A stretch of 64,000 bases of DNA, taken from positions 434,001-498,000 of the IMG/VR virus record IMGVR_UViG_3300005613_000001; one strand, 5' to 3'. Shown one piece after another: positions 2,744-33,058 of this stretch (the stretch's first letter is position 1; the number at the start of each line of letters is the position of its first letter). Made by a program: the position numbers and the translations under genes. The notes beneath the pieces are model-generated. The model was not told the origin of the DNA. It was given only the letters and a program-made list of their open reading frames with translations, and did no database searches.

Positions 2744-3100
2744 TAGTGTATCAATGTCTGTTTTGCCATCATCTTCTGGTTTCTCAAGTTTCTTTTGCTC
2801 TTCTTCAATCATATTATCAATAATATTAAGAGCATTCATAAGTTGCTCAGGAGACCACGGTTTTGCCTCGGGTTGCGCGGCTTGAATGGCATGTGCAGCA
2901 GAGGGCATTCTGGCAAGTCCAGGCTGGGGCTTTAACTGCCTAGATTCTCTTTTCGCTCTCTTCTTTTCTACTTTGGCTATCTCTTGGAAGGCTGCATTCA
3001 AATGAAATCTTGCCTCTGAAAGCGCAAAATCCTCGGGTATATTTTTGATTGCCTCTAATAAATGTGATTTTGCTTTTGAAGTATTACCCATTATTACCAT
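2735..3100 (-). CDS. Hypothetical coiled-coil protein downstream of terminase
   Basis: 121 aa ORF, helical and charged, overlapping the terL stop; no recognisable motif. Confidence 0.6.
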   Translation of the reverse strand: MVIMGNTSKAKSHLLEAIKNIPEDFALSEARFHLNAAFQEIAKVEKKRAKRESRQLKPQPGLARMPSAAHAIQAAQPEAKPWSPEQLMNALNIIDNMIEEEQKKLEKPEDDGKTDIDTLLG

Positions 3101-4926
3101 CCAAACTCTCGGAGTAACCGCTCGTTTTTTCGCCGTACATTGAAGACAACACCAGGCGTAACATCCCCTTGATAGGTAGCGAAAATGTCGTCATCTTCTT
3201 CAATAAAATCCTCAGGAGCCCCGTTTTTTAACTCCTGTTTAATTTCCTCATAAACTTCTGATTTAAATACATCCATCAGTTCCTTTGGGATGTCTGCTCC
3301 AACGGGAATGTCTCGCATTGCTTGGTCCCGAATGTAAACAGCAATCGCCAAAGCCATAATTGCATCGTCATGTTTGCCCTTCTGAGCTTCTGGTTTCCTT
3401 CTAGAAGTATTATAAATAAATGTTTTCAATTCATGAATTAATCTTGGACTATTAATAATTAAACTTTTTTGTAGAATTCTACTTTGAATTGCCTGCATTA
3501 CCATTGGGCGCACTTGAATGGTAGTTTTAATCCCTGCCTGTTGCCTTTTAGCTGCATCATAATATAGATTCTCATACATCAAAGTATTCTGAAGGGCACT
3601 TATTACTGCACCTCCTGATGATGCCATGTTTTCCACAACTATCTTTGATGTGTTGTAAAAAATTCCAGTTTGATTTATGATCTGAGCAAAATCATGAGGC
3701 GGGACTTTATTGCTATAGAACTCTGCTACTTGTTCAAGGGTGGAATCATCAATTATTGAAAAAGCACTACTATCGCCCCCTTCTCCAACACCATCTGCAC
3801 AATCCACTCCCATTGTGTATTCGTGACCATCTACAGGTTCTTTCCAAACCCACAACGCCCCTTCTTCTTCTGCATACTCTTCGTGATCGTTACACCACTG
3901 AGGAAATAAAATACGTTTAGGTCCATCTTTTGTTCTAATATTCGCATCAATGTCAGCGATAATGTGACCGGGAATATATGTTTCACCAGAACCCAGGAAT
4001 GATCGCATAACTTCCTGTTGCCAACCCTTTTCTCCCAGTTGTGCTCGTTGATCTGCAACCCAGTCAGCATCGTTGTAATCCGGGTGTTCCCAGAAATCTA
4101 AATCAATGACATGAAATTTATTTTTCTTAACTTGAGCGTTATGATAAATTTCCTCATACCAGTTACCAAGACCATTAACTGTAGAAATGGCGATACAATT
4201 ACCACCCGTAGAAAGCGTAGGATACATAGCTTTCCAATGCTCTTCCATACCATCGATGAAGGCAGCCTCATCCAAGATCATATAAGTTAAAGCACGGGTA
4301 CGAGCAGCTTCAGGGCCTTGGAAATCAATACGACTACTTGTGATTAAAAATTCTTTAACGTGGTCATTATTTTTACCCATTTCAGGTTGCAACCATGTTG
4401 GTAGCCACTGAATAGCTCGGGCAACCATACCAGCACCCGTCATAGCTTCACGGTCGGTCTTTGACATAACCATCATGGTCTGGTCTTTTTTAAACATACA
4501 CCGCCATAAAGCCCAAATAGCTGTGGTGGTGGTTAGCCCTCCCTGTCGGAATTTAGAAATAATTGTGAATCTATGTTTATCGTATTCATCAATTACCCGC
4601 CTCTGATAATTGTATAGAACAAAGGGCAGGAGACCCCTAATGGGATGCATGATTTTGATGTATTTGTGGCAAAAGTAAGGAAAATTATTGATACATTTTA
4701 TAATTTCTTCTCTTTGTTTTGCTGGATCACGTCCATATGCTTCAACTTCTGCGTCTGTTTCATCTGGATCAATTGCTATTTCATCGGCAGATAGTGTGTA
4801 GTAGGGAAATTGCTCTTCTGCCTTAATTACATTCAATGTCTCTGGATCAAGAATGCTATACTGTTGATTAAACTCATTTGCATAGTAATCTTCCAAAGTG
4901 TCGTATTTATCTCGCCATATACTCAT
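3094..4926 (-). CDS. terL: Terminase large subunit (T4 gp17-like)
   Basis: Walker A-like ISKFRQGGLTT, Walker B LDEAAFI, coupling motif STVNG, RNase H-like nuclease GVDCADG...D and KHDDAIMA. Likely start MSIWRDK at 4926. Confidence 0.95.
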   Translation of the reverse strand: MSIWRDKYDTLEDYYANEFNQQYSILDPETLNVIKAEEQFPYYTLSADEIAIDPDETDAEVEAYGRDPAKQREEIIKCINNFPYFCHKYIKIMHPIRGLLPFVLYNYQRRVIDEYDKHRFTIISKFRQGGLTTTTAIWALWRCMFKKDQTMMVMSKTDREAMTGAGMVARAIQWLPTWLQPEMGKNNDHVKEFLITSSRIDFQGPEAARTRALTYMILDEAAFIDGMEEHWKAMYPTLSTGGNCIAISTVNGLGNWYEEIYHNAQVKKNKFHVIDLDFWEHPDYNDADWVADQRAQLGEKGWQQEVMRSFLGSGETYIPGHIIADIDANIRTKDGPKRILFPQWCNDHEEYAEEEGALWVWKEPVDGHEYTMGVDCADGVGEGGDSSAFSIIDDSTLEQVAEFYSNKVPPHDFAQIINQTGIFYNTSKIVVENMASSGGAVISALQNTLMYENLYYDAAKRQQAGIKTTIQVRPMVMQAIQSRILQKSLIINSPRLIHELKTFIYNTSRRKPEAQKGKHDDAIMALAIAVYIRDQAMRDIPVGADIPKELMDVFKSEVYEEIKQELKNGAPEDFIEEDDDIFATYQGDVTPGVVFNVRRKNERLLREFGW

Positions 4927-4931
4927 ATCAT

Positions 4932-4957
4932 TATTTATGTAAGTAGAAACGTAAATA
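4932..4957. promoter_or_regulatory. Back-to-back late-promoter-like TAAATA hexamers
   Basis: TATTTA at 4932-4937 (TAAATA on minus) is 5 nt from terL ATG 4926; TAAATA at 4952-4957 is 5 nt from ATG 4963. Resembles the T4 late promoter TATAAATA. Confidence 0.6.
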
Positions 4958-4962
4958 AAAGT

Positions 4963-5178
4963 ATGGACGATCAAGAGAAAAAAGACATGGAGATGTCACC
5001 ACCCAAGAGGCGGGGAATTATCACGACGGGTACAATTGTTACCACTCTTATCGTGGCGGCGCTCCTAGAAGTTTTCAAAGCTACGATTAATTTCCTGTGG
5101 GGTCTTTTGTTAACTAAATTCTGGAAAAAGAAACAAGAGGAAGCAGAAAAAGAACAAAAGAAGAGTCAGTGGAATTAA
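4963..5178 (+). CDS. Small membrane protein
   Basis: MDDQEKKD... with one long hydrophobic segment and a basic C-terminal tail (KKKQEE). Start reassigned from 4810 because the upstream part overlaps terL. Confidence 0.55.
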   Translation: MDDQEKKDMEMSPPKRRGIITTGTIVTTLIVAALLEVFKATINFLWGLLLTKFWKKKQEEAEKEQKKSQWN

Positions 5179-7855: not shown

Positions 7856-7931
7856 ACCTTATGTATTCTTCAAATTGAGAAATAGTTGCATATATAAGGT
7901 AGACGTCATTTTTTTACAGAGAGGTAATTCG

Positions 7932-8507
7932 ATGGACGAAATTAAAGTAGAAGTGATCCGTACCGAGGATGGCAGATATGCCGAGCGTCACGTCAGGGAA
8001 GTTGCGGAAAGTGATCCCTGCGGAAAGTCCTTTGAAGCTGAAAAGGTCATCGAGCAATGGGAAGAAGATCGCCCCTTGCTTCTCAAAAAGCGAGTGCGCG
8101 AGAAGAGACAACCATGTGTTGTGGAAAGAGTTGTTGAGACAATTGAAGACAACGAAGTGGTTGATGTTCAAGTAGAATCTATTGAGCCTGACACCAAGCT
8201 TGAATTAAGATCTCACATTGCAGTTGCCAAGCCAGAAGTAGGTGCAGCAAAAGTCGATGAGTGCTACGTAACTAGAGATGATCTTAAAGAAGTCATGTTA
8301 AGCGTGACAGAACAGTTGAAAGATGCTTTTGAAAACCGAGAGGTTGCTGAAAGACGACCGAGTTCTCGCATGCAAGCGGTAGTAGAAGAAGAAGTTGAAC
8401 AGGCTGATGATGAAAAATGGGGAGCAGTAGAGTGGATTCTTCTGGGCATTGTAGCCATCGAGGGTGCCTATCTACTAGTGAACTGGCTGCCTCGTCTGCT
8501 TGGGTAA
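7932..8507 (+). CDS. Hypothetical tail-anchored membrane protein
   Basis: GAGAGG SD before ATG 7932; charged body with a single C-terminal TM (WILLGIVAIEGAYLLVNWL). Confidence 0.65.
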   Translation: MDEIKVEVIRTEDGRYAERHVREVAESDPCGKSFEAEKVIEQWEEDRPLLLKKRVREKRQPCVVERVVETIEDNEVVDVQVESIEPDTKLELRSHIAVAKPEVGAAKVDECYVTRDDLKEVMLSVTEQLKDAFENREVAERRPSSRMQAVVEEEVEQADDEKWGAVEWILLGIVAIEGAYLLVNWLPRLLG

Positions 8508-8609
8508 TTTGGCAAGATAAATATAAATTACATAACTTCCCGTTCTATGACGTTTACATAAAAATTGCACCAGTAGTACGTATTACATTTAAGAATCTGT
8601 ATGATATGC

Positions 8610-8643
8610 AAAAGCCTTATGATTTTAGATCATGAGGCTTTTT
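8610..8643. terminator. Bidirectional terminator between convergent genes
   Basis: AAAAGCCT(T)ATGA-loop-TCATGAGGCTTTTT. Confidence 0.75.
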
Positions 8644-9167
8644 CATTTGAATCCCCACTTTTTAGCCATCCTACCAAACCACTGATCCCTAGCTTCAACT
8701 GCCTGCTCTTCCCTCTCTTTGCGACTCTCTTTCTTGTCATCGCCTCTTAATTTTGAGGCGACTCTAAAAAGCCCCTCTATTTGATCTTCCCATCTGGGAT
8801 GAGGCACATAACTTTCTAGTTCGCCCGCCTCCTCTTTGAAAACCAAATAACCCTCTGCTAACACCGTGATAGTCTTATTGAGGTATTGTATCTCTAAATG
8901 CATTCCACGACTTAAACCATCAAATAAATAACCAACTACTATTGTTTGTTCGCCTTCCTCAAAAACAGGCATTTCCTCATCTTCTTCATCTTCTAGTGCC
9001 CAAGGGTCTTCCATTTCATTTGTATCATAAAGAGGCGAGGAGTGGGACATAATAGGTTCGCCCATATACTTCAAAATACAACCGAATTTTCCCCCAAGAC
9101 CAAAATAATCTTTATGGGTCGCCTCGATTGTTCTTTGTTCTTTGATTTTTGCTTCTTTGCTCTTCAT
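8643..9167 (-). CDS. Hypothetical protein
   Basis: 174 aa ORF co-oriented with and overlapping mscL; no motif recognised. Confidence 0.6.
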   Translation of the reverse strand: MKSKEAKIKEQRTIEATHKDYFGLGGKFGCILKYMGEPIMSHSSPLYDTNEMEDPWALEDEEDEEMPVFEEGEQTIVVGYLFDGLSRGMHLEIQYLNKTITVLAEGYLVFKEEAGELESYVPHPRWEDQIEGLFRVASKLRGDDKKESRKEREEQAVEARDQWFGRMAKKWGFK

Positions 9168-9681
9168 CTATTTTATTCTTCGCAAAAGGGTTATCCAAGA
9201 TAGTAGTGCAATAAGGGCATCTGGCTGATTGATAATGAATTTTACATAAACAAAATGGGCATTCAATTCCCTCGTCACAAATTATCTCAGGAGGCTTATC
9301 ATCCTGTTCAATTCTTCTAAATATTCTGCTGTATAGGTAGTATAAAATCGCTGCAATTATAATAAAATCTACAAATACCCCTAAAAAGTTGCCCAATTCA
9401 ATAACAACTCCTTCTATGGGCTCAAAAACTACCTTTCGCCAATCACCGTCAGCCTGATTCATAATATAGGTCAAGAAAGGCATGATAAGATGCTCTGAGA
9501 TAGATGCTACTACATTTTTAAATGCTGCCCCGAGCATAAAGGCAATAGCCATTTGAATCATTCTATCCTTGAATGCAAACTCTTTGAACGCCTCAAATTC
9601 CTTCCGTCCGACAAGACCTTCGATCTCATCTCCCAACTCATCTTTGATGCGTTCTACATCTATTATTGACTTAGGTTTCAT
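9112..9681 (-). CDS. mscL: Large-conductance mechanosensitive channel with C-terminal zinc-ribbon-like CxxC...CxxC
   Basis: FKEFAFKDRMIQMAIAFMLGAAFKNVVASISEHLIMP aligns with MscL S1/TM1 ([37 protein letters not shown]). TM2 is GNFLGVFVDFIIIAAILY; C-terminal CPFC..CPYC. Confidence 0.88.
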   Translation of the reverse strand: MKPKSIIDVERIKDELGDEIEGLVGRKEFEAFKEFAFKDRMIQMAIAFMLGAAFKNVVASISEHLIMPFLTYIMNQADGDWRKVVFEPIEGVVIELGNFLGVFVDFIIIAAILYYLYSRIFRRIEQDDKPPEIICDEGIECPFCLCKIHYQSARCPYCTTILDNPFAKNKIDEEQRSKNQRTKNNRGDP

Positions 9682-9684
9682 ATA

Positions 9685-9692
9685 TATAAATA
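9685..9692 (+). promoter_or_regulatory. T4-type late promoter TATAAATA
   Basis: Exact TATAAATA octamer in the 47-bp divergent gap before the peptidase at 9729. Confidence 0.55.
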
Positions 9693-9728
9693 GAGTAAAA
9701 ACTATCTTATTATCAGGAGGATCTAGTT

Positions 9729-11186
9729 ATGTTCGATTGGTTCCAAAACTTTTTAGATTGGTTCTACGGATTATTCTCTAGCGGCGAAAAAGCCGAGGCA
9801 AGGAAAGAGGATTTGTACATCCAATACTTGATGAATGATCCAACGACCCCAGAATTAATGGTAGAAGTCGTGCCACCTAACCCGCCCAAAGGCATGGATT
9901 TCCTAGTTCAAAATTATGTGGGTGGAGGATACCCTTGGGATCATTCCAAGGGACGTGCCGCAAACTGTTATGTTACGATGGCGCAAACTATTAAACAAAT
10001 TCAACGATATTCCCCCAGACCATTACAGCGATGGGCAGCTACGAACACCCTGTTGGTTGTCCCACAAGCGGGAAGACAACTAAATGCGTATTATGACCGT
10101 AGACATTTGAAGTTTTTCTATGCTTACGATAGAGAAATGCGAAAGGATGTTTATACATCCGACTCAGTGGATATTGTTGCACACGAATTGGGACACGCAC
10201 TTTTAGATACTATGCGACCTGACTTGTGGAGCGTACAATCACTAGAAGGATGGGGTTTCCATGAAGCATATTCTGATGTAAATGCTATTCTGGCATTACT
10301 TGGAAATGATGAAATTGTAAATCACGTTTTGAAAGAAACAGAAAATGATTTGAGGAAACATAATGTTGTTTCCAAATTAGCAGAAGAAATGGGCGATGCC
10401 ATCTATAATATCACCCGAGGAAGAGATGGTAGAAAACCGGGTGCCCTAAGAAATGCTATTAATAACTTCAAATATACTGAACCTGAAAAATTGCCCCAAA
10501 ATGCTCCCCACGATAAATTGGCCGGGGAATGCCATAGCTTTGGAAGATTATTCTTAGGTGCTTGGTATGACTTCCTAGTGGCTCTCTATGAACATAAACG
10601 AGCCCGAGGTAAAACGCCTAAAACAGCATTAAAAGAGGCGAGAGATGTCGCGGGACTTTATATTGTCCGTGGATTATCTCACGCTCCCGCATGCGTGCGA
10701 TACTACAATGCTGTCGCTAGAGCTATGATGGCTTATGATAAAACAAAATGTCATTCTCGCTATCAAAAGATTCTTCAAGAGGTATTCACAAAACGAGGAA
10801 TCTTGCGTCCAAAAGCTAGAGTCCTTTCTAATTTAACTTGGCAGGGACTAAACCTTAAGAATGATGATGATGTCATGAAATCAGACCACGGCTGGGTAGT
10901 CAGGTCAAAGAAAATTGAAACTTTAAAACTATCGGATCATTTAGAAGCTAGAACCCTAGTGAATAATCCATTGTTTAATGTTGAAATTGAAGTTCCAAGA
11001 GATAGCTACTTTGAATTTGATGCCAACGGCAACTTAGTTGACCAAATTCAAGAAAGTACCGAGGAAGTAGTGAATGCAGCTAGAGCTTGTTTGGTCCAAT
11101 TGGATACCCAAGGACAAGTAGGCGATGGCGAAGACACTATGTTTGCTATCGTAGATGGAAAATTAGTTAGAACTCATATTGAGTAA
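9729..11186 (+). CDS. Thermolysin/fungalysin-like (M4/M36) zinc metallopeptidase
   Basis: NAYYD, DIVAHELGH (HExxH) and GFHEAYSD (third zinc ligand Glu); amphipathic Trp/Phe-rich N-terminus. Confidence 0.88.
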   Translation: MFDWFQNFLDWFYGLFSSGEKAEARKEDLYIQYLMNDPTTPELMVEVVPPNPPKGMDFLVQNYVGGGYPWDHSKGRAANCYVTMAQTIKQIQRYSPRPLQRWAATNTLLVVPQAGRQLNAYYDRRHLKFFYAYDREMRKDVYTSDSVDIVAHELGHALLDTMRPDLWSVQSLEGWGFHEAYSDVNAILALLGNDEIVNHVLKETENDLRKHNVVSKLAEEMGDAIYNITRGRDGRKPGALRNAINNFKYTEPEKLPQNAPHDKLAGECHSFGRLFLGAWYDFLVALYEHKRARGKTPKTALKEARDVAGLYIVRGLSHAPACVRYYNAVARAMMAYDKTKCHSRYQKILQEVFTKRGILRPKARVLSNLTWQGLNLKNDDDVMKSDHGWVVRSKKIETLKLSDHLEARTLVNNPLFNVEIEVPRDSYFEFDANGNLVDQIQESTEEVVNAARACLVQLDTQGQVGDGEDTMFAIVDGKLVRTHIE

Positions 11187-11242: not shown

Positions 11243-12052
11243 TTATGCATATCCAAAAAATCTGTTGTAATCTTGAAACCTATTCATAATAGTGTTTGCA
11301 AGATCAGGAGAAAAATACTGCCTCCACTCGTTAGGATCAGAAGCCTCAACCTTACCCGATCCCGTGTGTGGGAACTTATGCAAATAAAATCCATCAGGGT
11401 CTTCAGCGGTGTTCTCTATGTTTTCAAAATCATGCTCAAATAGTGTTTCGTCTAATTCAGTGTAAATCTTCTCAAAGACACCATTTGGATCGGCTGCCAT
11501 ACTCTCATACTGAACATAAACAACACCAGGCGGTTTGCGACGAATTAAATCCTCAATTCCTAAAATGGGACCACCTATCAAACCCTGTTCACTAAACATA
11601 CGGTTTGCCCTGTCAAAAACAGTCTTTTGAATGGCATTCTGAGCATCATCCAATAGAGGATTCTTTCGATGTTGTTTCTCTATAGAAGCAAAAACATTTC
11701 TTAAATCCCGCACCATCACAATGAGCTTGGAATCAGGATAAAGCTTCTTTAATGAAAGGGAATTGAGTGACCACGCCCGGCTCTTATCAAAAATAATCTC
11801 CCGACTTTCCTGCTTATACCAAGTTTCTACGAAAGCCTGGATACTATCTGTAATCCGTTGCTCGGTTTCCACCTTCTTTTTCTCTAAAAGACTTTTTACC
11901 TCTACGGCATTACTGATATTATGAACCATACCATTGAGAATTCCCGGCAAAGGAGATGTACTGGTAGCCCAAAACCGTGGGTTCTGATTCAAAATATTAC
12001 ATAAAAGCGTACTACCAGCCCTCGGTAGCCCCGTAATAGCATTTAATTTCAT
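11243..12052 (-). CDS. Sulfotransferase family protein
   Basis: GLPRAGSTLLCNILNQ PAPS loop, DKSRAW and VMVRDLRNVFAS. Confidence 0.88.
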   Translation of the reverse strand: MKLNAITGLPRAGSTLLCNILNQNPRFWATSTSPLPGILNGMVHNISNAVEVKSLLEKKKVETEQRITDSIQAFVETWYKQESREIIFDKSRAWSLNSLSLKKLYPDSKLIVMVRDLRNVFASIEKQHRKNPLLDDAQNAIQKTVFDRANRMFSEQGLIGGPILGIEDLIRRKPPGVVYVQYESMAADPNGVFEKIYTELDETLFEHDFENIENTAEDPDGFYLHKFPHTGSGKVEASDPNEWRQYFSPDLANTIMNRFQDYNRFFGYA

Positions 12053-15379: not shown

Positions 15380-19456
<4,077 letters not shown>

Positions 19457-19474
19457 TTAGGAACTTCCTTGTCC

Positions 19475-20878
19475 TTATATATGGCTGTTACGCATACCTT
19501 TACACAGAAGAATATAAGATGAGGTATCTTCTCCGCCTTCAATCCACTTTTCGGCCCAATTAAATCTTATTATATCTTTAATTTCAATTAGATCGCCCAA
19601 CCTTTTTCGCAAGGTATCTTCTGAATAAACTCGCACATGAGCCGGGTCAGTAAAAGAAGGAACAGAAAAGATCACATTTTTATTAGCAGGAATTTTAGAT
19701 ATAATTTTAATATCATCTAAATGCTCTAAGACTTCTGTAAGAACATAGGTGTCGTAATCGCCAAAATCTTCTTCATACGCATCGGCTTTCCACACATTAG
19801 GATTGTTAGCCACTCGTACAGCCTCATCACTAAAATCAAAACCATGATAGTTGTGAATATAATATTGCAATTCGGCTGTACCACAACCTATTTCCAAAAC
19901 ACTTCCAGTCGCCCAATCCGCAACTTTCTTAGTAATTGCTTCATAGCGACTCATATCTGTGCTTTTTTTGAAGATCTTGTTGTAATATTCTGATTTTTGT
20001 TCTAGGGCTTCATGGGTGAATAAGACGGCATCATTTGTAGCCATCCCTGCGAATTGTTCCCATTTTTTCCTGTTTTTAGGGCCTGACATTTGTGCCATTA
20101 GGTTAAGTGCGGCTCTAAAGTCAGCATTTATTTTAATTGCTTGCAAACAGGCATCTCTTGCTTTTTCGCCTTGCTGTAGCTGCCAATAGGATTTAGCTAA
20201 AAGATAATAAGCATCTGCCATCTCCCCGCCCCAAGATTTCTTTTCTAGATAGATTTGGAGCCAATAGACTGCTTTTTCCCATTCATATTTGTATGTGTAT
20301 TCCCGCCCCAAATAATAGACTTCTCTAACGAGGTTTGGATTTTTTTTAATTTCTTTAGTTAAAATTCTTAGTGTTCTATTGGGGTCATCATTATGCGAGG
20401 GGCTTTTATAGAAGTTAATTTTAACATCGAGTCGTTCTTGTTTTGAGATACCTTTGAGGTAATTATGGATAGCTCCGTGCCATTTTATTTCAGGTTTATT
20501 AAGGCAGACTCTTGGAGAGTAGAAAGAGGTATTTCCTCCGACAACCCGTAAACAGAGGGCTTCGCATGGAGTTTCTTTAATTTTTTCACGAATTTTATCA
20601 AGACCACCATCCTCTAGAATCTCATCTGCATCGATAATGAGAATCCAATCTCCGGTAGCTTTGGTATTGGCAAAATTTCGTGCTTCAGCGAAATTATCAT
20701 TCCAGACGTATTCATTTTCAAAGAAATTATCTGTATATTTTAATGCTACATCTCTTGTTTTATCGGTAGAACCCGTATCAACAATTACAATTTCATCTAC
20801 GTCTTTAATGGATTCAAGGCAATTACCCAGCATTACCTCTTCATTTTTAACTATCAATACTGCTGAAATCTTTGTCAT
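19475..20878 (-). CDS. GT2 glycosyltransferase - TPR - class I SAM methyltransferase fusion
   Basis: ISAVLIVKNEE...DEIVIVDTGSTD...ILIIDADE (GT2), TPR-like helices (YYLGREY, YYLLAKSY), then VLEIGCGT...VLEH. Confidence 0.88.
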   Translation of the reverse strand: MTKISAVLIVKNEEVMLGNCLESIKDVDEIVIVDTGSTDKTRDVALKYTDNFFENEYVWNDNFAEARNFANTKATGDWILIIDADEILEDGGLDKIREKIKETPCEALCLRVVGGNTSFYSPRVCLNKPEIKWHGAIHNYLKGISKQERLDVKINFYKSPSHNDDPNRTLRILTKEIKKNPNLVREVYYLGREYTYKYEWEKAVYWLQIYLEKKSWGGEMADAYYLLAKSYWQLQQGEKARDACLQAIKINADFRAALNLMAQMSGPKNRKKWEQFAGMATNDAVLFTHEALEQKSEYYNKIFKKSTDMSRYEAITKKVADWATGSVLEIGCGTAELQYYIHNYHGFDFSDEAVRVANNPNVWKADAYEEDFGDYDTYVLTEVLEHLDDIKIISKIPANKNVIFSVPSFTDPAHVRVYSEDTLRKRLGDLIEIKDIIRFNWAEKWIEGGEDTSSYILLCKGMRNSHI

Positions 20879-23434: not shown

Positions 23435-23502
23435 TTCACACTTTTTCTATGCTGTTTTGCCATATATAAGGTAGTGAAGGATTATACTATAAAGGAGTTC
23501 CT

Positions 23503-24431: not shown

Positions 24432-25070
24432 ATGGCTGCTATTTTGCCTAATTCAATTTTTGTTCATATCCCCAAAACGGGAGGCACGTTTGTCAGAAGA
24501 ACAATTAAAGATCTTGGACTCTATCGTGGCGAAGCATATGAAGGGAATAACAACTGGACGAGAATACAAGTAATTCACTTGGGGATTGGTGATATTCAAT
24601 CCAACAAGTTAACTTTTGCTTTTGTTAGAAATCCTACAACTTGGCTTCAAAGCAAGTGGACCAATATGGTCCGTAGGTTTAAAAAAAGCTCTAAACCATC
24701 TAAACATCTTTGGAAGAACGATTGCTTTTCCAAAGATTTTGGTGAATTTGTTAGAAAAGTGTTGGATTTACACCCCAATAGACCTACAATTGAAATGAAT
24801 AATAAATTAGGGTATGAAGTTGTTTATGATAAATGTCAACCTAAGAAGCATCACGTTGATCTAATTGGAAAAAATGAATCTTTGAGAGAAGATTTAATTC
24901 GAATTCTAAACACAGCGGGAGAAGAATTTGATGAAAATACAATATTAAACAAAGAAGAACAACGGGTGGCTTCTCGATCAAGGAATTGGGCGTGTCAATA
25001 TCCACCGGGATTAGAAGATAAAGTAATAGATGCTAATTTGCCTTTTGCAAAAGCATTTGGTTATTTTTAG
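24432..25070 (+). CDS. Sulfotransferase family 2-like protein
   Basis: FVHIPKTGGT and FAFVRNP..W..S motifs. Confidence 0.8.
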   Translation: MAAILPNSIFVHIPKTGGTFVRRTIKDLGLYRGEAYEGNNNWTRIQVIHLGIGDIQSNKLTFAFVRNPTTWLQSKWTNMVRRFKKSSKPSKHLWKNDCFSKDFGEFVRKVLDLHPNRPTIEMNNKLGYEVVYDKCQPKKHHVDLIGKNESLREDLIRILNTAGEEFDENTILNKEEQRVASRSRNWACQYPPGLEDKVIDANLPFAKAFGYF

Positions 25071-26106: not shown

Positions 26107-26874
26107 CTAACCTTTCTGTTTGCCACAATATTTATAACCAAAATGTTCCATAAGATCCGAACGCTCGCCCAGGACATCATTTATTTCAATGAAGTCCCTT
26201 TTTTTCAACTTAGAAATCTGTTTGTTATTTTGATTTTCCAATCCAAACACTTTTTCGTATCGCTTACGATTAAAAGCCCTATTTGGATCAAGACGCTGTA
26301 ACTCGGGAATGAAATTAACTAAATTCTTGCAAACATTCAAAGTATCATCACACATTTCCTCATAGCTAAAGAAAATATTTCCTTTGAGAGTTCGTTTGTT
26401 TCTAATTTGATGTTCCGCACACTTCAACCAATGTGTCGCAGCAACAGTTAATGAATGCCCCATTTTTCTTCTAATACCTTCGCAAAAAGCGTAGGGGTTA
26501 CGTAGGTTGATAATAAACTTTGTATTCTCAAATTCATTCTGTGTTAGATGAGCACGCAATACACTCTGAGGGCTTTTTTCTACTAGGATGGATTTACTAA
26601 TGTTCCACCTTTCAAACCAAGCAGCTTTTATTTTAGGCCAATTGTAATTGGCATTGTTCATGAATTTTTCTTCATTAATCGTACAATTACGTCGCTCATC
26701 TCCTGAAGAACGAGGCATGTGGGCTCGGGCTTTCCTTACACAAACTCCTTCGTGAAGCGTGTTGCGTATAAGGGAAACATTAGGGGAAGTTCCCAATAGT
26801 TTGGCTAACAAAGTAGAGCCTGAGTTGTTGGGACACACTATAAAAAGAAATAAATGCTTAAAATTCATAATCAA
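26107..26874 (-). CDS. Sulfotransferase family protein
   Basis: CPNNSGSTLLAKLL, LVEKSP and FIINLRNPYA. Confidence 0.8.
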   Translation of the reverse strand: MIMNFKHLFLFIVCPNNSGSTLLAKLLGTSPNVSLIRNTLHEGVCVRKARAHMPRSSGDERRNCTINEEKFMNNANYNWPKIKAAWFERWNISKSILVEKSPQSVLRAHLTQNEFENTKFIINLRNPYAFCEGIRRKMGHSLTVAATHWLKCAEHQIRNKRTLKGNIFFSYEEMCDDTLNVCKNLVNFIPELQRLDPNRAFNRKRYEKVFGLENQNNKQISKLKKRDFIEINDVLGERSDLMEHFGYKYCGKQKG

Positions 26875-27418
26875 ACTCTTTTATGTCTTTTGCAAAATAT
26901 GTTGCTACCACTTGACGCCCTAAGTCGCTGTAGTGGCGACGATAACCTTTTCCTCGCTTACTAGAATTGTGATTGCCTAGAGGGGAGTAAGGCATGTCTA
27001 TCTCTTTTAATAACCTCCTCCAATCGGTCGCTAAGCGTTCAAATCGGCCCACAAAATCCACTCTTGTTTTCCCACGATATCGTAACCAATTAACTTGATT
27101 TGTATATCGCAACTTATTCCATAAATCCAACTCCGTCAATTTTACTAGCCATGTGTTGAATTCAAAATCGTTTACCGCTTGCGAACGTCTTGCGTTTGCT
27201 CCCCCATCAAGATTGTGCTGGTACATTGACAACATCTTATCCCACGGGTTACGCACAAACGCAAATGAATAATGTGATTCAAAATTCTTCCATCCCAGGT
27301 CTTTGACATGATCCAGAACAGTCTTATGGTCTCCCTTCCAACCAAAAAACCTTTCAATTGATGTCCCGGCACACCTGTTTATGTGGATAAATATTAAATT
27401 CCGCTCCTTGTCTCTCAT
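26858..27418 (-). CDS. Sulfotransferase family 2 protein
   Basis: FIHINRCAGTSI, FAFVRNPWDKMLSMY and DFVGRFE. Confidence 0.85.
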   Translation of the reverse strand: MRDKERNLIFIHINRCAGTSIERFFGWKGDHKTVLDHVKDLGWKNFESHYSFAFVRNPWDKMLSMYQHNLDGGANARRSQAVNDFEFNTWLVKLTELDLWNKLRYTNQVNWLRYRGKTRVDFVGRFERLATDWRRLLKEIDMPYSPLGNHNSSKRGKGYRRHYSDLGRQVVATYFAKDIKEFDYEF

Positions 27419-27703: not shown

Positions 27704-27888
27704 TCTTTTCTCTCTTTTATTAAATCTCCAAGAACTGTCACTAACAACATAAGCACCATACCCTCTATGACGCCTATCTGGTGGGGGGAAAGCTCACTCC
27801 AAATTGCCCAATGCCCCGCTACTAAATAATATGCCACCCATGTTAAAATAAGACCACCAATAAGTAGCCCTAATAAAAAGTTCCACAT
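27700..27888 (-). CDS. Small two-TM membrane protein
   Basis: 62 aa with two hydrophobic segments; coupled to both neighbours by overlaps. Confidence 0.6.
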   Translation of the reverse strand: MWNFLLGLLIGGLILTWVAYYLVAGHWAIWSELSPHQIGVIEGMVLMLLVTVLGDLIKERKE

Positions 27889-28661
27889 TACTTACTCCGA
27901 TAATAAGGACAAATGGTTTTATAATCACATCTAAAACAATGATCGCCCACCTTTCCAAAGATGGAATCAGGATTTGTAGCCCTGATCTCATCAAAAGCAG
28001 TTACCAACTCTACTACAGCACTGTCAATTGCTCTTTGTGTAAATCTAGCAGGAACCAAATTTCCACCTTCAACATAATATAAGGCGGCTGCAATCCGATT
28101 AGCAGGAACTTCATACTCTATCTGAACGGCTTTACTATAAGCGCGTAATTGTAAATCCTGACCAATTGTTTGAGGAGTTTTCCGCCAAATACCTTTCTTC
28201 GTAGTCTTATAATCAATAATGAAAATCTTATCCTTGGCATCATTAGTAATTAAACGGTCAATAATGCCGATAAGTCTCTTATTATGAGGCGGGTCTAAAT
28301 CTATATTGAAAGAGTGTTCAAGTTTGCCCTTGAATCCAATTTGTTGAGTTAGAGAATCAATTGACCTAATGTGCCCTGGCAAACGTTTCATGTAGGCCGC
28401 TGGAATCTTAGATGCTTTTTTGCCATTTTCAATTTCAATCTCACCATTTATGACAGCATCTCGGATTTCGCTCAATGATACATCACCCTGATTCGCAATA
28501 TACTCTTCAGCAATTTTGTGTACAATCTTGCCGTACTCAAAATAGTAGGGTTCAGGCACCGGCGATTCAAGTTTCAGAAAGTACCGATACTTGTATTGTT
28601 GGCGGCATGTATCCCAAATTGATTTTCTTGTAACGCTTATTCGTTCTATATCCATAGTCAT
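27888..28661 (-). CDS. PD-(D/E)XK RecB/Cas4-like exonuclease
   Basis: TCRQQYKY, G.IVH, GIIDRL, IIDYKT and QLRAY motifs; C-terminal HCFRCDYKTIC (Fe-S staple pattern). Confidence 0.88.
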   Translation of the reverse strand: MTMDIERISVTRKSIWDTCRQQYKYRYFLKLESPVPEPYYFEYGKIVHKIAEEYIANQGDVSLSEIRDAVINGEIEIENGKKASKIPAAYMKRLPGHIRSIDSLTQQIGFKGKLEHSFNIDLDPPHNKRLIGIIDRLITNDAKDKIFIIDYKTTKKGIWRKTPQTIGQDLQLRAYSKAVQIEYEVPANRIAAALYYVEGGNLVPARFTQRAIDSAVVELVTAFDEIRATNPDSIFGKVGDHCFRCDYKTICPYYRSK

Positions 28662-30005: not shown

Positions 30006-30040
30006 AAAGCCGCCTCAATTTTTTGGGGCGGCTTTTTTTT
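30006..30040 (+). terminator. Rho-independent terminator
   Basis: AAAGCCGCC-loop-GGCGGCT then T8. Confidence 0.88.
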
Positions 30041-31064
30041 ATCGACTCAAAATGTGTAGGAATTCCTGAGTAGAAGTTCCTTTGTAGTCCCTTTTGCTGT
30101 CCGCTTTAAATCGTGAATAATCCTTTTCACGCATGTCATACTTGCCGTATTTCTCCATTATCTTCTGGATTTCTTCAAATGATAGCAAACCTTCATTGTT
30201 GTAACTCAAGAAGATGTAGTTGAACTTGGCGGCGCTGATTATCTCATCTAGAGATTCGGGCACAGTTTTCTTGGAACAATATGTTGACCGCTCATATTCC
30301 CGCAACCCTGTCTTCCCTCTCGGTAAAAATTCATCATATTTTGCAATCGTATTGAGCAAATGATAGTTAGCACCGTAATCACGTTGGTTATATGGGGGGT
30401 CCAGGTAGAGAATTCCGCCTTCAATATGATGAATTAACTCGTTGGCATCCTGGTTGTAGGCTATGTTGCTGCCATCGTTAATGGTAAATTCCGGCGCATG
30501 CAACTGCATTGTGCGTATCGCTGTCTTTTTGAACTTCTTTAGGAATGCCCCATAGACAGAAGCAGTGTTGGCAACGCAATCTGCCGCCTCTAATAATGAA
30601 CATAAGTAGAAGTAATATTCGTTATCGTTGATTGCGCCGCTGGACAACCATCTTTCTATTTCCATTCTAATAGCATCAATCTTTTTGCCATTCTCATCAC
30701 TGAAATACATCCTTTCCGATCCACCAACGCAATAGTTGTTGAAGATAAACCCCTCTACTCCTGGTAGTTCGTTTAAATATTTGAGGCGGTCTACATGTGG
30801 AAAATGTTGGTTGTTGCGGATATAGTTGCGGCAGAAGACATAACTGTAATACTCAATATCGTTAGCAATGACGGATTGAACGTGGGGTTTGAAAAATCTC
30901 CCTACGATTCCCGTACCTGCAAACAGGTCACAGAATACTTGTTGTTCTAAATCTGGTACAGTCTCTTTAATTGTCTGATGAATAAAATCTAAAAGTCTGT
31001 ATTTAGAACCAATATAGTTAATCTGACATTTCGGTTTCATTAAAATTAGCTGGCAACTTAACAT
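30039..31064 (-). CDS. DNA adenine methyltransferase (Dam/D12 class)
   Basis: NYIGSK, DLFAGTGIV and YLDPPY. Confidence 0.92.
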   Translation of the reverse strand: MLSCQLILMKPKCQINYIGSKYRLLDFIHQTIKETVPDLEQQVFCDLFAGTGIVGRFFKPHVQSVIANDIEYYSYVFCRNYIRNNQHFPHVDRLKYLNELPGVEGFIFNNYCVGGSERMYFSDENGKKIDAIRMEIERWLSSGAINDNEYYFYLCSLLEAADCVANTASVYGAFLKKFKKTAIRTMQLHAPEFTINDGSNIAYNQDANELIHHIEGGILYLDPPYNQRDYGANYHLLNTIAKYDEFLPRGKTGLREYERSTYCSKKTVPESLDEIISAAKFNYIFLSYNNEGLLSFEEIQKIMEKYGKYDMREKDYSRFKADSKRDYKGTSTQEFLHILSR

Positions 31065-32169
31065 TCTCTAAAGTCTTTTGGGTAAAGACATATCTCCCAC
31101 CTGTTTTAAAGCCCAACTCCTCCCAATCAATTTGGTTGAGTTTGTCTCTCATCATCTCTAGACGCATGGGTATGGTTGGGAATATCGCCAAAATAGAGCC
31201 ATCATAGTTTTTACAAGGGTGTAGAAAGAAAGGATTCTTCGCCCTTGTCTTGCAATTGACATATATTCTGGGCTCATCACTCTTATGGCACTCTCTGCCC
31301 CACTTCCACCAATCCGCCTCTTTAAATTTCTTAACCCTTCTATTTAAGAGGCGGTCTTTGTGTTGCATGAGGTAGTCATTTTCCACATTGTAGTACATTC
31401 TCTTCAGCTTATTGGTCGTCCGCGTGTAGGAACAAACGAATTCCTCATTCCCATCTGGATGCTCAAACACTTCATCGAGACCACTAACTGCTCCTACTTT
31501 AACAAAGAACAAATCTTTAAAATCTAAGGAGTAATCTTTCTTAGTGAAACATATCTGCCCATTCATGCAGACAAAGTTTCTTTCCCCTTTAGTAGTGATG
31601 GTCTTTCTGGTGAGATTATCTTTCTCATACCGCCAAACTGCGCATGTGGGCGAGAAGCCTTTGAATATCTGTTTGTCTCCTAAGTCAAAAAAATGGGTTA
31701 TTGTTCCTTGATCCCATAGAAGTTGATTCAATTTAAAGCTGGAAGTGGCTTTGATGAAATCTCGGGGCGTAATGAAGATGATCTCCCCCTGAGCTTCCAA
31801 ATGCCGAAAACACTTCTCAATAAAAAACAAATATAAATTGGCTCTTTTATCAAACAAATCAAACCGCAATTTGTTTTTGGTGCCTTCTTGTATGTTTTTA
31901 AAAGCAACATAGGGTGGGTTACCCATAATAGTGACGAATTTGTTTTCTATTGAATAATCAAAAAAATCCATACAAAGACAATCATCAGGGCACAACTCTT
32001 TGTCCAATTCAATACAAGCGCTAGGTTCAAGGAGTGATAAGAAATCTCCCTCTCCCGCACTGGGCTCTAATGCTGTGCCATGATTCCGCCTCAAATGATT
32101 CATCTTCCCTACAATTTTTTGAGGCGTGAATATTTGACCTAGTTGTTCAACATTTCTGTGGATATCCAT
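31018..32169 (-). CDS. N6-adenine DNA methyltransferase (gamma class, TaqI/Eco57I-like)
   Basis: GQIFTP, LEPSAGEG and IMGNPPY. Confidence 0.9.
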   Translation of the reverse strand: MDIHRNVEQLGQIFTPQKIVGKMNHLRRNHGTALEPSAGEGDFLSLLEPSACIELDKELCPDDCLCMDFFDYSIENKFVTIMGNPPYVAFKNIQEGTKNKLRFDLFDKRANLYLFFIEKCFRHLEAQGEIIFITPRDFIKATSSFKLNQLLWDQGTITHFFDLGDKQIFKGFSPTCAVWRYEKDNLTRKTITTKGERNFVCMNGQICFTKKDYSLDFKDLFFVKVGAVSGLDEVFEHPDGNEEFVCSYTRTTNKLKRMYYNVENDYLMQHKDRLLNRRVKKFKEADWWKWGRECHKSDEPRIYVNCKTRAKNPFFLHPCKNYDGSILAIFPTIPMRLEMMRDKLNQIDWEELGFKTGGRYVFTQKTLENVKLPANFNETEMSD

Positions 32170-33058
32170 TTTCGATTAGAAGATTTGCCATTCGCACATA
32201 ATCCATATTAATATCAAATCCATAGGCAGTCATTCCCAAGCTTTTAGCAGCGTATAACTCACCGCCAGTACCAGCGAAAGGAACAACAACAATCCCATCT
32301 TCAGGTGGTTTTGATGCCAAGAGCAGCTTAGTGCTTAATTCCAAAGGTTTTTGTGTGGGGTGGGTAACAATTTCATGTTTATCATGTTCTTTCTTTTTCA
32401 TAGATGCGAAAATATTATCACAATCTTTGCAATAAAAGAACCTTTCTACACGGCCCGCTCCACCGGCTAGGGCTGGAATTTTAAATACATCTCTTGGCAA
32501 AGCACCCTTATCATGTGCTTTGTATATAGTTGTTTTCCCTTTTGAGGAAAACCGACCCTCTGTATCTTTTCTTTCTTTTCCTGCTGCGTTTTTCAAAAAG
32601 GTTGGGGTATAGGGTTCTCTTACATCATCTAAATTAAAGATTCGATTTTCGTCAGTCTTCCAAATTGCCAGCACAGATTCATGGCTTCGTTGCCAGAATT
32701 TATTTGTTGCTGAATTCTTATTAGTGTAATGCCAAACTAACCACCTACAGGGGTAGTCTATAGTGACAAATAAATGGGCGAGTATTTCAGAAAAGCCATA
32801 AATATAAGTTGTGCCTGAGGGTTTTAAAACCCGCATGGAATGGTGTATCCATTCTTGAGCCCATTCCACATATTCTTCAATCTCCACTTTGCATGTGTTA
32901 TTCCCGAAATCCTTTCCAATGTTATACGGAGGATCAATTAAAACGATATCAGAATATTCTCTGGGTAGGTTTCTAAGACCCAAAGTGGCATCCAATAATG
33001 TCACTCTATTTGGAAAGAAATGATTTTTGACTATGCACATATTATTGAGGGCTCCCAA
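32147..33058 (-). CDS. N4/N6 DNA methyltransferase (beta class)
   Basis: IDPPYNIGK, HPTQKPLEL and VPFAGTG; CxxC insertion. Confidence 0.92.
   Translation of the reverse strand: MGALNNMCIVKNHFFPNRVTLLDATLGLRNLPREYSDIVLIDPPYNIGKDFGNNTCKVEIEEYVEWAQEWIHHSMRVLKPSGTTYIYGFSEILAHLFVTIDYPCRWLVWHYTNKNSATNKFWQRSHESVLAIWKTDENRIFNLDDVREPYTPTFLKNAAGKERKDTEGRFSSKGKTTIYKAHDKGALPRDVFKIPALAGGAGRVERFFYCKDCDNIFASMKKKEHDKHEIVTHPTQKPLELSTKLLLASKPPEDGIVVVPFAGTGGELYAAKSLGMTAYGFDINMDYVRMANLLIENGYPQKC

What the first reader, a model, noticed from the sequence alone, without database searches (positions are those of the whole stretch)
9112..9681. Phage-encoded MscL channel with a rewired hinge and extra termini
Seen: clear MscL S1-TM1-TM2, but the conserved Gly-Asn hinge (E. 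coli G14-N15) reads Asp-Arg, position 23 is Phe and position 30 is Lys. There is also an acidic N-terminal extension of about 25 aa and a C-terminal CxxC-CxxC ribbon. The gene sits head-to-head with a metallopeptidase around a TATAAATA late element. Known: MscL is the osmotic emergency valve, and TM1/hinge substitutions shift its gating threshold. Inference: it may tune osmotic lysis timing (holin-like leak or lysis delay), or act on host MscL via hetero-oligomers.
Basis: partly seen in the sequence, partly recalled or inferred. Interest (0 to 1): 0.68.

Follow-up and report, generated by a model that had tools for sequence, protein, structure and literature searches.

The report
Huge-phage MscL channel with zinc ribbon
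A very large bacteriophage carries its own copy of the bacterial pressure-release channel MscL, from a previously undescribed phage-only branch of that family, so the phage probably manages the pressure or leakiness of the cell it infects.

Summary
The ORF at 9112-9681 (-) is a real MscL homologue (Pfam PF01741, 74 bits against a cut-off of 27). Every residue-level claim holds. E. coli G14-N15 reads D39-R40, position 23 is Phe, and position 30 is Lys. There is a 25-aa N-terminal extension and a C-terminal CxxC-x10-CxxC ribbon.

The window is a huge myophage (contig 216-527 kb). The gene sits in conserved synteny in at least 10 divergent phage contigs. It falls in a 94-member clade (SH-aLRT 95) whose located members are all on phage contigs. 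No hit from 185,579 cellular species genomes joins that clade.

The features called "rewired" are not phage inventions:
- The hinge dipeptide varies across the clade (GH, GQ, GR, DK, DN, DR).
- Polar G14 substitutions still gate in E. coli.
- The solved archaeal MaMscL shares the AIAF TM1 and lacks the GN hinge.
- The C-terminal ribbon is common in cellular MscLs (Veillonella, Paenibacillus).

TATAAATA occurs at chance frequency and points at the peptidase gene, not mscL.

Best reading: a tightly closed, tension-gated relief valve that the phage supplies to the infected cell. A lysis-timing role or poisoning of host MscL remains possible but is untested. I rate it a new variant of a known kind, of moderate interest.

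The parts
9112..9681 (-). mscL-like gene, 189 aa plus stop codon
   Evidence: ORF; Pfam PF01741 74.4 bits; matches to solved MscL structures; 100% identical copy in IMG/VR contig UViG_3300005613_000001.
9595..9681 (-). N-terminal cytoplasmic extension, aa 1-29; charged helix predicted at 9-24
   Evidence: Absent from E. coli, S. aureus and M. acetivorans MscL in the alignments. Conserved motif in the 25-member subclade, with R11, E15, E21 and G25 invariant. Net charge -2.
9562..9594 (-). S1 amphipathic helix plus hinge, aa 30-40 (F32 and F35 = Ec F7 and F10; D39-R40 = Ec G14-N15)
   Evidence: Gapless alignment to EcMscL; F32, F35, A36, F37 and K38 invariant in the clade.
9484..9561 (-). TM1, the pore-lining helix, aa 41-66 (M44, A45, I46, A47, F48, G51, F54, K55)
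   Evidence: The A-I-A-F-x-L-G motif is invariant in the subclade and shared with MaMscL.
9394..9483 (-). Short periplasmic loop, aa 67-96 (M67-P68, W81-R82 invariant)
   Evidence: loop length and the Trp resemble MaMscL.
9316..9393 (-). TM2, aa 97-122 (G97, F103, D105-F106 invariant)
   Evidence: Hydropathy peak; alignments.
9202..9267 (-). C4 zinc ribbon, aa 139-160 (CPFC-x10-CPYC), preceded by an acidic linker at aa 123-138 (9268-9315)
   Evidence: All four Cys conserved in P0001-P0010 and L007-L016; AF2 pLDDT about 80 with short strands; no Pfam model reaches threshold.
9115..9201 (-). Polar, basic C-terminal tail, aa 161-189; poorly conserved; overlaps the start of the next gene by 56 nt
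8643..9167 (-). Downstream co-oriented gene ('down174'): soluble protein with an N-terminal helical hairpin, an acidic disordered linker, a beta-meander and a 48-residue C-terminal helix. No known fold.
   Evidence: Full-length orthologues lie downstream of mscL in L003-L016 and L096 (next to it or overlapping, except L014, which has an insert of about 900 nt). AF2 pLDDT 80. No fold match. It is also present without mscL in LR756511.1.
9729..11186 (+). Divergent 485-aa protein with a gluzincin-type motif (HELGH ... EAYSD)
   Evidence: Motifs invariant in 8 orthologues; AGGAGG Shine-Dalgarno sequence ending 8 nt before the ATG; no Pfam, PHROG or PDB match.
9682..9728 (.). 47-bp divergent spacer. 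The TATA-rich element (about 9679-9695, includes TATAAATA at 9685-9692) starts in the first codon of mscL and reads toward the peptidase gene.
8606..8646 (.). Hairpin between the end of down174 and the convergent gene 7932-8507; a likely two-way terminator that closes the mscL-down174 unit
   Evidence: Folding energy -15.4 kcal/mol (z -4.3) on the - strand and -20.0 kcal/mol (z -4.8) on the + strand, the latter followed by UUUUU.

Best explanation
The gene encodes a working MscL-type channel that a huge myophage makes in the infected cell and inserts into the host inner membrane.

The parts that sense tension and form the pore are all kept:
- an S1 helix with its two anchoring Phe residues;
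- a pore-lining TM1 with a small-residue face and a bulky hydrophobic gate (Met, Ala, Phe);
- the Met-Pro loop start;
- TM2 with its Asp-Phe pair.

The gate is at least as hydrophobic as in high-threshold cellular channels. I therefore expect the channel to stay shut until the membrane is stretched and then release solutes. I also expect gating properties closer to the archaeal MaMscL type, which has a short loop, no C-terminal helix bundle and a small conductance.

The most likely use is as an emergency relief valve. It would keep the infected cell from bursting early, during a long infection that fills the cell with phage DNA and counter-ions, or when outside salinity drops.

The extra N-terminal helix and the zinc ribbon lie on the cytoplasmic side, under the pore. 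They probably replace the usual C-terminal bundle as a module that tunes the threshold, filters what passes, or docks a partner.

Shown: family membership, conservation, phage context and synteny. Inferred: gating behaviour, the relief-valve role and the role of the termini.
For: Family membership: Pfam MscL at 74 bits and eight solved MscL sequences matched.

Fingerprint residues kept and invariant in 13 homologues: F32, F35, A45, G51, F54, M67-P68, G97, D105-F106.

Real phage gene:
- The window holds a terminase, baseplate genes and a collagen-like fibre protein.
- The contig is 216,527 bp in one collection and 527,112 bp in IMG/VR.
- The same gene order (peptidase <- -> mscL -> down174 ... 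M28 peptidase, terminase) recurs in at least 10 phage contigs. MscL is 43-52% identical there, against 47-68% for the terminase, which fits long vertical retention.

Phage-only clade:
- The 94-row clade has SH-aLRT 95. Every locus in it is viral, and none of the 76 hits from GTDB species genomes falls inside it. The best cellular identity is 36%.
- Four more clade members were looked up and all lie on phage-like contigs carrying a T4 baseplate gene, terminase, RNA ligase, Apyc1 or PTH2/RF-1.
- Further IMG/VR contigs of 259 and 511 kb carry the clade.

Gate and hinge:
- A47 and F48 match the MaMscL TM1.
- Polar residues at G14 still allow gating in EcMscL (PMC4917966).

Cytoplasmic domain:
[quoted passage not shown] MaMscL lacks it and conducts 0.25 nS (PMC6167328).
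- Zinc ribbons were added at either terminus in different subclades, and both termini are cytoplasmic.
Against: - No function was measured.
- The host and habitat are unknown, so an osmotic need is assumed.
- Expression timing is unknown, and no convincing promoter for mscL was found.
- A close relative, LR756511.1 (595 kb), has the same module without mscL, so the gene is dispensable for that lineage.
- Host cells normally already have mechanosensitive channels, so the benefit of a phage copy is not obvious.
- The AF2 monomer model is poor (pLDDT 54), and no pentamer was modelled.
Confidence: 0.45

Rival explanations
1. Lysis-timing device (holin or pinholin-like, or a lysis delay). The channel builds up harmlessly in the membrane. 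Late in infection it opens, collapses the membrane potential or lets solutes out, and so sets the time of lysis.
For: - Two transmembrane helices with both ends in the cytoplasm and a charged C-terminal tail, the general layout of class II holins (holin layout from general knowledge).
- The gene lies among packaging and structural genes.
- It faces a conserved zinc-peptidase-motif gene.
Against: - No lysozyme, amidase or spanin-like gene was found among the neighbours scanned by Pfam or PHROGs within about 10 kb, or in the other window ORFs scanned.
- The HExxH protein matches no known endolysin family.
- The full MscL tension-sensing apparatus is conserved, and a simple hole-former would not need it.
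- The gate is more hydrophobic, not leakier.
- LR756511.1 lacks the gene, which is unlikely for a sole holin.
Confidence: 0.17
2. Interference with host channels. The phage subunit mixes with host MscL subunits and changes or blocks their gating. Alternatively it acts as a membrane protein that excludes superinfecting phages.
For: - MscL is a homo-oligomer, so mixed pentamers are conceivable.
- The clade carries unusual cytoplasmic add-ons that could poison or plug a mixed channel.
Against: - The protein is at most 36% identical to any MscL hit recovered from 185,579 species genomes. Co-assembly with a host subunit would therefore have to tolerate a very divergent TM1-TM2 interface.
- All residues needed for a self-sufficient channel are kept under selection.
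- No host is known against which to test it.
Confidence: 0.08
3. Regulated conduit rather than safety valve. The zinc ribbon and N-terminal helix respond to a cytoplasmic signal (redox state, zinc, or a bound protein or nucleic acid). The channel then opens to release or admit small solutes or small proteins during infection.
For: - Zinc-binding modules were gained independently at the N- or C-terminus in different subclades, and some members have coiled-coil extensions instead.
- The downstream gene overlaps or abuts mscL in most loci.
- The literature allows that the C-terminal domain may bind partners or act as a filter (PMC6167328).
Against: - The same ribbon sits on ordinary cellular MscLs, so it is not a phage-specific switch.
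- The downstream gene persists without mscL in LR756511.1.
- The complex prediction gave no verdict.
- Many clade members have no ribbon at all.
Confidence: 0.2
4. Not a functional phage gene: host DNA carried by mis-assembly, or a decaying passenger gene.
For: - MscL is almost absent from cultured phage genomes. A canonical MscL query finds 20 of 50,697 records, most of which look like host fragments. The window protein finds only 2, both from faecal metagenomes.
Against: - The ORF is intact, with 28 invariant residues across 13 homologues.
- It sits in the same place in at least 10 independent, divergent phage contigs.
- No close cellular homologue exists.
Confidence: 0.02

Closest known systems
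Bacterial MscL (E. coli, M. tuberculosis, S. aureus; Pfam PF01741)
   Same: S1 helix with two Phe residues, TM1 with an A/G face and hydrophobic gate, Met-Pro loop start, TM2 Asp-Phe pair, both termini cytoplasmic.
   Different: - G14-N15 replaced by D-R.
- G22 and V23 replaced by A and F.
- Short loop.
- No C-terminal helix bundle.
- 25 extra N-terminal residues and a C4 zinc ribbon.
- Encoded by a phage.
- At most 36% identity to any cellular hit.
Methanosarcina acetivorans MscL (MaMscL; PDB 4Y7K and 4Y7J)
   Same: - Best solved match (E 2.3e-11).
- Same A-I-A-F TM1 and a non-GN hinge (E-Y-K).
- Short loop with a Trp.
- No C-terminal bundle.
   Different: - MaMscL is cellular (archaeal).
- No counterpart of the window's N-terminal extension or zinc ribbon appears in the alignment to the solved chain, a riboflavin-synthase fusion.
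- The alignable core is only partly identical (alignment).
Cellular MscL-zinc ribbon fusions (for example Veillonella atypica KON, Paenibacillus eucommiae, Oribacterium sp. F0262, Terriglobales MAGs)
   Same: C-terminal CxxC-x10-CxxC directly after TM2 and its linker. The Terriglobales versions also have an A-I-A-F TM1 and a K-Y-N hinge, and group next to the phage clade.
   Different: - Most keep the canonical K/R-G-N hinge and a G-rich TM1.
- They have no N-terminal extension.
- They are chromosomal.
- I found no paper describing this architecture, so its role is unknown there too.
Phage holins and pinholins (class II, two transmembrane domains)
   Same: Small inner-membrane phage protein with two TM helices and a charged cytoplasmic tail.
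   Different: - Holins are unrelated in sequence to MscL and lack S1, the loop and the TM2 fingerprints.
- No endolysin or spanin partner is seen nearby.
Virus-encoded ion channels (for example the chlorovirus Kcv potassium channel; from general knowledge, not tested here)
   Same: A virus carrying a pared-down or modified version of a cellular channel.
   Different: Different channel family, a eukaryotic virus, and a role at entry through the virion membrane. Tailed phages have no membrane.

Membership tests
MscL (PF01741) | Profile match above the curated threshold | tested here: met
   74.4 bits against a cut-off of 27.4, residues 30-128 covering profile positions 3-103 of 123.
MscL (PF01741) | N-terminal amphipathic S1 helix with two conserved Phe (Ec F7, F10) | tested here: met
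   F32 and F35 align to F7 and F10 and are invariant in 13 homologues.
MscL (PF01741) | Gly-Asn hinge between S1 and TM1 (Ec G14-N15) | tested here: not met
   D39-R40. This is not disqualifying. MaMscL has Y-K here, G14 polar substitutions still gate in EcMscL, and the dipeptide varies within the phage clade.
MscL (PF01741) | Pore-lining TM1 with a small-residue face and a hydrophobic constriction (Ec L19, A20, G22, V23, G26) | tested here: met
   M44, A45, A47, F48 and G51; A45, I46, A47, F48 and G51 invariant.
MscL (PF01741) | Second TM helix with the conserved Asp-Phe pair; Met-Pro at the loop start | tested here: met
   M67-P68 and D105-F106 invariant; hydropathy peak over residues 97-121.
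MscL (PF01741) | C-terminal cytoplasmic helix bundle (S3) | tested here: not met
   The Pfam match stops at profile position 103 of 123, and a zinc ribbon follows instead. The bundle is also absent in MaMscL and is not needed for mechanosensitivity.
MscL (PF01741) | Homopentamer | not tested
   Only a monomer was folded (pLDDT 54).
MscL (PF01741) | Opens on membrane tension; rescues cells from osmotic downshock | not testable with these tools
   Needs patch clamp and complementation.
Phage holin | Encoded in a lysis cassette with an endolysin and/or spanin | tested here: not met
   No lysozyme, amidase or peptidoglycan-peptidase domain in the ORFs scanned. The rest of the 216-527 kb genome lies outside the window.
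Phage holin | Timed lethal hole formation | not testable with these tools
   Needs expression and lysis assays.
T4-type late promoter (TATAAATA) | Motif enriched and placed upstream of late genes in the right orientation | tested here: not met
   6 copies against 6.24 expected. One of six is upstream of a gene, and it faces the peptidase gene rather than mscL. It is not conserved in orthologous spacers.
Zinc ribbon (C4) | Two CxxC knuckles about 10 residues apart on short strands, conserved | tested here: met
   C141, C144, C155 and C158, conserved in P0001-P0010 and L007-L016. AF2 predicts strands with pLDDT about 80. Pfam zinc-ribbon models are only sub-threshold. Metal binding was not tested.

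The most novel reading that the evidence does not exclude
A whole phage-specific branch of the MscL family exists. It is carried mainly by jumbo and huge phages and has its own cytoplasmic add-ons: an N-terminal helix, and C4 or CHCC zinc ribbons at either end. Phages use it to control the turgor or permeability of the infected cell. This would be the first mechanosensitive channel shown to be a viral tool in bacteria. It would also be a natural set of MscL variants with altered hinge and gate residues.
Probability: 0.4. Interest if true: 0.7.

Novelty: new variant of a known kind. Interest (0 to 1): 0.55.

Why it matters
MscL is one of the best-studied model channels, yet in the papers I could search I found nothing on phage copies or on zinc-ribbon-bearing MscLs. 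A conserved MscL in huge phages points to an unstudied need: keeping a cell mechanically intact, or opening it on cue, while hundreds of kilobases of phage DNA are copied many times over.

The clade also offers natural experiments for channel biophysics. These include a hinge without Gly-Asn, an Ala-Phe gate, and swapped cytoplasmic domains. The finding further flags that cellular MscLs with zinc ribbons are common and unexplained.

Tried and rejected
- **DNA search:** a search of the region against 50,697 phage records found no match.
- **AF2 monomer of MscL:** too poor to use for fold search (pLDDT 54).
- **Downstream protein (down174):** the model was good (pLDDT 80), but Foldseek against PDB and BFVD and VIA-align wide gave nothing above noise (best Z 4.7). 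It has no Pfam, PHROG or PDB sequence match.
- **Complex prediction, MscL plus down174:** no verdict (score 0.00). This is not evidence either way.
- **Idea that down174 is an obligate MscL partner:** weakened. LR756511.1 has the peptidase gene and down174 side by side with no mscL. L014 has about 900 nt inserted between the two genes. The P0011-13 phages have no down174 homologue nearby.
- **Peptidase gene:** a profile search against PDB found nothing.
- **Wide alignment of the clade:** too diverse for an IMG/VR pattern scan. A narrower alignment worked.
- **Literature:** seven searches and four paper look-ups found no description of phage MscL or of an MscL-zinc ribbon fusion. The library is incomplete, so this is not proof of absence. 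The MaMscL structure paper is not held.
- **Host identification:** not achieved. The best-matching phage record carries no host or habitat. The only hint is use of Shine-Dalgarno sequences (AGGAGG or GGAG).
- **Sigma-70 and terminator scan:** gave no convincing promoter for mscL.
- **Rejected outright:** host contamination, a pseudogene, or a virion membrane protein.
Full report
**1. What is there**

The ORF at 9112-9681 on the minus strand encodes 189 residues. It matches the Pfam MscL model well above threshold (74.4 bits against 27.4; residues 30-128). It also matches eight solved MscL sequences. The best is the Methanosarcina acetivorans channel 4Y7K (E 2.3e-11), followed by S. aureus, E. 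coli and M. tuberculosis.

The alignment to E. coli MscL runs without a gap from query residue 30 (Ec K5) through TM1.
- G14-N15 is D39-R40.
- G22 is A47.
- V23 is F48.
- G30 is K55.

The rest of the family fingerprint is kept. It comprises F32 and F35 (Ec F7 and F10), A45, G51, F54, M67-P68, G97 and D105-F106, and it is invariant in 13 homologues.

Twenty-nine residues precede S1, which is about 25 more than in E. coli. They have net charge -2 and a predicted helix at 9-24. After TM2 comes an acidic linker, then CPFC-x10-CPYC. This ribbon is the only confidently predicted part of the monomer model (pLDDT about 80). A polar tail follows.

**2. Context**

The window is a tailed phage. It has a large terminase (3094-4974), an M28 peptidase, baseplate and spike proteins, and a 1357-residue collagen-repeat protein.

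The protein's cluster comes from a 216,527-bp contig. An identical stretch, covering mscL and every flanking gene compared (12.6 kb), lies in an IMG/VR contig of 527,112 bp. The closest terminase in the phage collection is from a 595-kb uncultured phage, LR756511.1 (50% identity). T4-like Flavobacterium, Microcystis and cyanophages are far behind.

mscL is followed by a 174-residue gene that overlaps it by 56 nt. The pair ends at a strong hairpin at 8606-8646.

Forty-seven base pairs upstream, on the other strand, starts a 485-residue protein. It carries HELGH and, 23 residues later, EAYSD. This gluzincin-type motif is invariant in eight orthologues, but the protein matches no Pfam, PHROG or PDB entry.

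**3. The 'late element'**

TATAAATA is at 9685-9692, but on the plus strand, 36 nt before the peptidase start codon. It therefore faces away from mscL. The window has six copies where 6.24 are expected by chance, and only this one precedes a gene. Orthologous spacers hold TATATA-like sequences, not the T4 consensus.

A different 11-mer, CATATATAAGG, occurs three times exactly. Each copy lies 19-33 nt upstream of a gene in the right orientation. It is a better promoter candidate for this phage. The mscL spacer has a related sequence that again points toward the peptidase gene.

I found no convincing promoter for mscL, so its timing is unknown.

**4. A conserved phage gene, not a passenger**

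The order peptidase <- -> mscL -> down174 ... M28 peptidase, terminase recurs in L003-L016, from at least ten different metagenomes. MscL identity there is 43-52%, against 47-68% for the terminase and 41-54% for the peptidase. That pattern is what long vertical inheritance gives.

A profile search of 1.84 billion representative proteins found 10,270 MscL relatives. I built a tree from the 100 core columns of the 150 best hits, the earlier homologues and all fetched loci.
- The window falls in a 94-row clade (SH-aLRT 95).
- Nearly all members of that clade lack the Gly-Asn hinge (91 of 94).
- Every locus in the clade is from the viral collection.
- None of the 76 hits from 185,579 cellular species genomes is inside it, and the best cellular identity is 36%.

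I looked up four further members. All sit on phage-like contigs that carry a T4 baseplate gene, terminase, RNA ligase, anti-Pycsar Apyc1, or PTH2 and RF-1. One of them, P0062, repeats the same gene order without a ribbon. Another IMG/VR scan added contigs of 259 and 511 kb.

Cultured phages essentially lack MscL. The window protein finds only two faecal-metagenome records among 50,697. A canonical MscL query finds 20 records, mostly fragments that look like host DNA.

Caveats:
- The tree has only 100 columns and used a quick search.
- The cellular sample was drawn by pattern search.
- Most clade members are known only as proteins from short metagenome contigs.

**5. The 'rewired' features in this light**

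- **Hinge.** Within the clade the hinge reads K-G-H, K-G-Q, K-G-R, K-D-K, K-D-N, K-D-R, K-K-S and more. Gly14 is often kept. What the clade has lost is Asn15, and Asp-Arg is one variant among many. In E. coli MscL, G14 tolerates S, Q, E and R, while bulky V or W kill function and deletion makes the channel leaky (PMC4917966). An Asp at this position should therefore be compatible with gating.
- **TM1.** The A-I-A-F TM1 and the non-GN hinge are shared with MaMscL, a solved MscL with a measured conductance (0.25 nS). A few cellular lineages group next to the phage clade and share these traits: Terriglobales (K-Y-N hinge plus ribbon), a Nitrosarchaeum MAG and a gammaproteobacterial MAG.
- **Position 30.** Lys at position 30 is seen in ordinary cellular MscLs.
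- **Ribbon.** The C-terminal CxxC-x10-CxxC ribbon is found on many canonical GN-hinge MscLs from isolates such as Veillonella atypica KON, several Paenibacillus species and Oribacterium sp. F0262.
- **N-terminal helix.** This conserved extension is what is particular to the window's 25-member subclade.
- **Variety of cytoplasmic add-ons.** The wider clade shows a C4 ribbon at the C-terminus, a CxxH...CxxC ribbon at the N-terminus on a different phage backbone (P0011-13), a long coiled-coil N-terminus (P0017), long basic tails (P0062) and extra membrane segments (P0029).

**6. How it most likely works**

All elements that couple membrane stretch to pore opening are under selection. The constriction is bulkier and more hydrophobic than in E. 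coli (Met, Ala and Phe in place of Leu, Gly and Val). From the established rule that hydrophilic gate residues lower the MscL threshold and hydrophobic ones raise it, I infer a tightly closed, high-threshold channel rather than a leak.

The short loop, the missing C-terminal bundle and the likeness to MaMscL suggest a smaller conductance.

I therefore favour a relief valve that the phage supplies to keep the infected cell whole through a long, DNA-heavy infection or through salinity shifts (confidence 0.45). The cytoplasmic helix and ribbon would tune the threshold, filter what passes, or dock a partner. These are roles that the literature already allows for the MscL C-terminal domain.

Rivals:
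- A signal-regulated conduit (0.20).
- A lysis-timing device (0.17). It is weakened by the absence of any lysis enzyme nearby and by the intact tension sensor.
- Interference with host channels or superinfection exclusion (0.08).
- An artefact (0.02).

**7. The neighbour**

The downstream gene is conserved and usually overlaps or abuts mscL. It folds confidently into a helical hairpin, a beta-meander and a long helix with no known relatives.

In LR756511.1, however, the peptidase gene and this gene sit 54 bp apart with no mscL between them. mscL is therefore an insertion into, or a loss from, an older gene pair. The neighbour is not an obligate channel partner. The complex prediction gave no verdict.

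**8. Verdict**

This is a genuine phage MscL, but the hinge, gate and ribbon features are traits of a clade or are also found in cells. They are not a unique rewiring.

The new point is the existence of a diverse, apparently phage-restricted MscL branch, held in conserved synteny in huge phages. I rate it a new variant of a known kind, with interest 0.55.

Noticed in passing
window 7889-7899 (+), 19473-19483 (-), 23461-23471 (+): The exact 11-mer CATATATAAGG occurs three times. Each copy lies 19-33 nt upstream of a gene start in the matching orientation. It is a candidate phage promoter. A related sequence at 9679-9695 faces the peptidase gene.
   Followed up: partly
window 11243-12052, 24432-25070, 26107-26874, 26858-27418; also 19475-20878 and 15380-19453: Four sulfotransferase-family genes and a glycosyltransferase-TPR-methyltransferase fusion lie near a 1357-residue collagen-repeat protein. 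That gene is much more GC-rich (0.50-0.54) than the window (about 0.39). This hints at sulfated or glycosylated fibres.
   Followed up: no
window 37164-38171 (-); also L096 542-1564: A strong match to the Volactin actin-like family (PF25216, E 1.7e-66) is encoded by the phage. A second phage contig of the MscL clade carries one too.
   Followed up: no
window 30039-33058 (-): Three DNA methyltransferase genes lie in tandem (D12 class, Eco57I-like, N6/N4). A PD-(D/E)XK nuclease is at 27888-28661 and a Toprim primase at 33950-34969.
   Followed up: no
L113 (LR756511.1) 16775-18729: In the 595-kb relative, the peptidase-motif gene and the down174 homologue are divergent neighbours 54 bp apart, with no mscL between them. 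mscL was therefore gained or lost at exactly this spot.
   Followed up: yes
L022-L058 (for example L046 6007-6474, L031 5989-6456): Many chromosomal MscLs of Veillonella, Paenibacillus, Oribacterium, Lachnospiraceae, Chloroflexi and Acidobacteria end in a CxxC-x10-CxxC zinc ribbon. I found no paper describing this architecture.
   Followed up: partly
L001 and L002 8001-8516 (proteins P0011-P0013): A sister subclade has a CxxH...CxxC ribbon at the N-terminus and none at the C-terminus. It sits on an unrelated phage backbone found in NCBI assemblies GCA_013329015.1 and GCA_013328895.1.
   Followed up: partly
window 7932-8507 (+): A conserved syntenic gene encodes a very acidic protein with a single C-terminal hydrophobic anchor. 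It converges on the mscL-down174 unit and shares its hairpin terminator.
   Followed up: no
window as a whole / L006: The same sequence is recorded as a 216,527-bp contig in one collection and a 527,112-bp contig in IMG/VR. The true genome size is unresolved.
   Followed up: no
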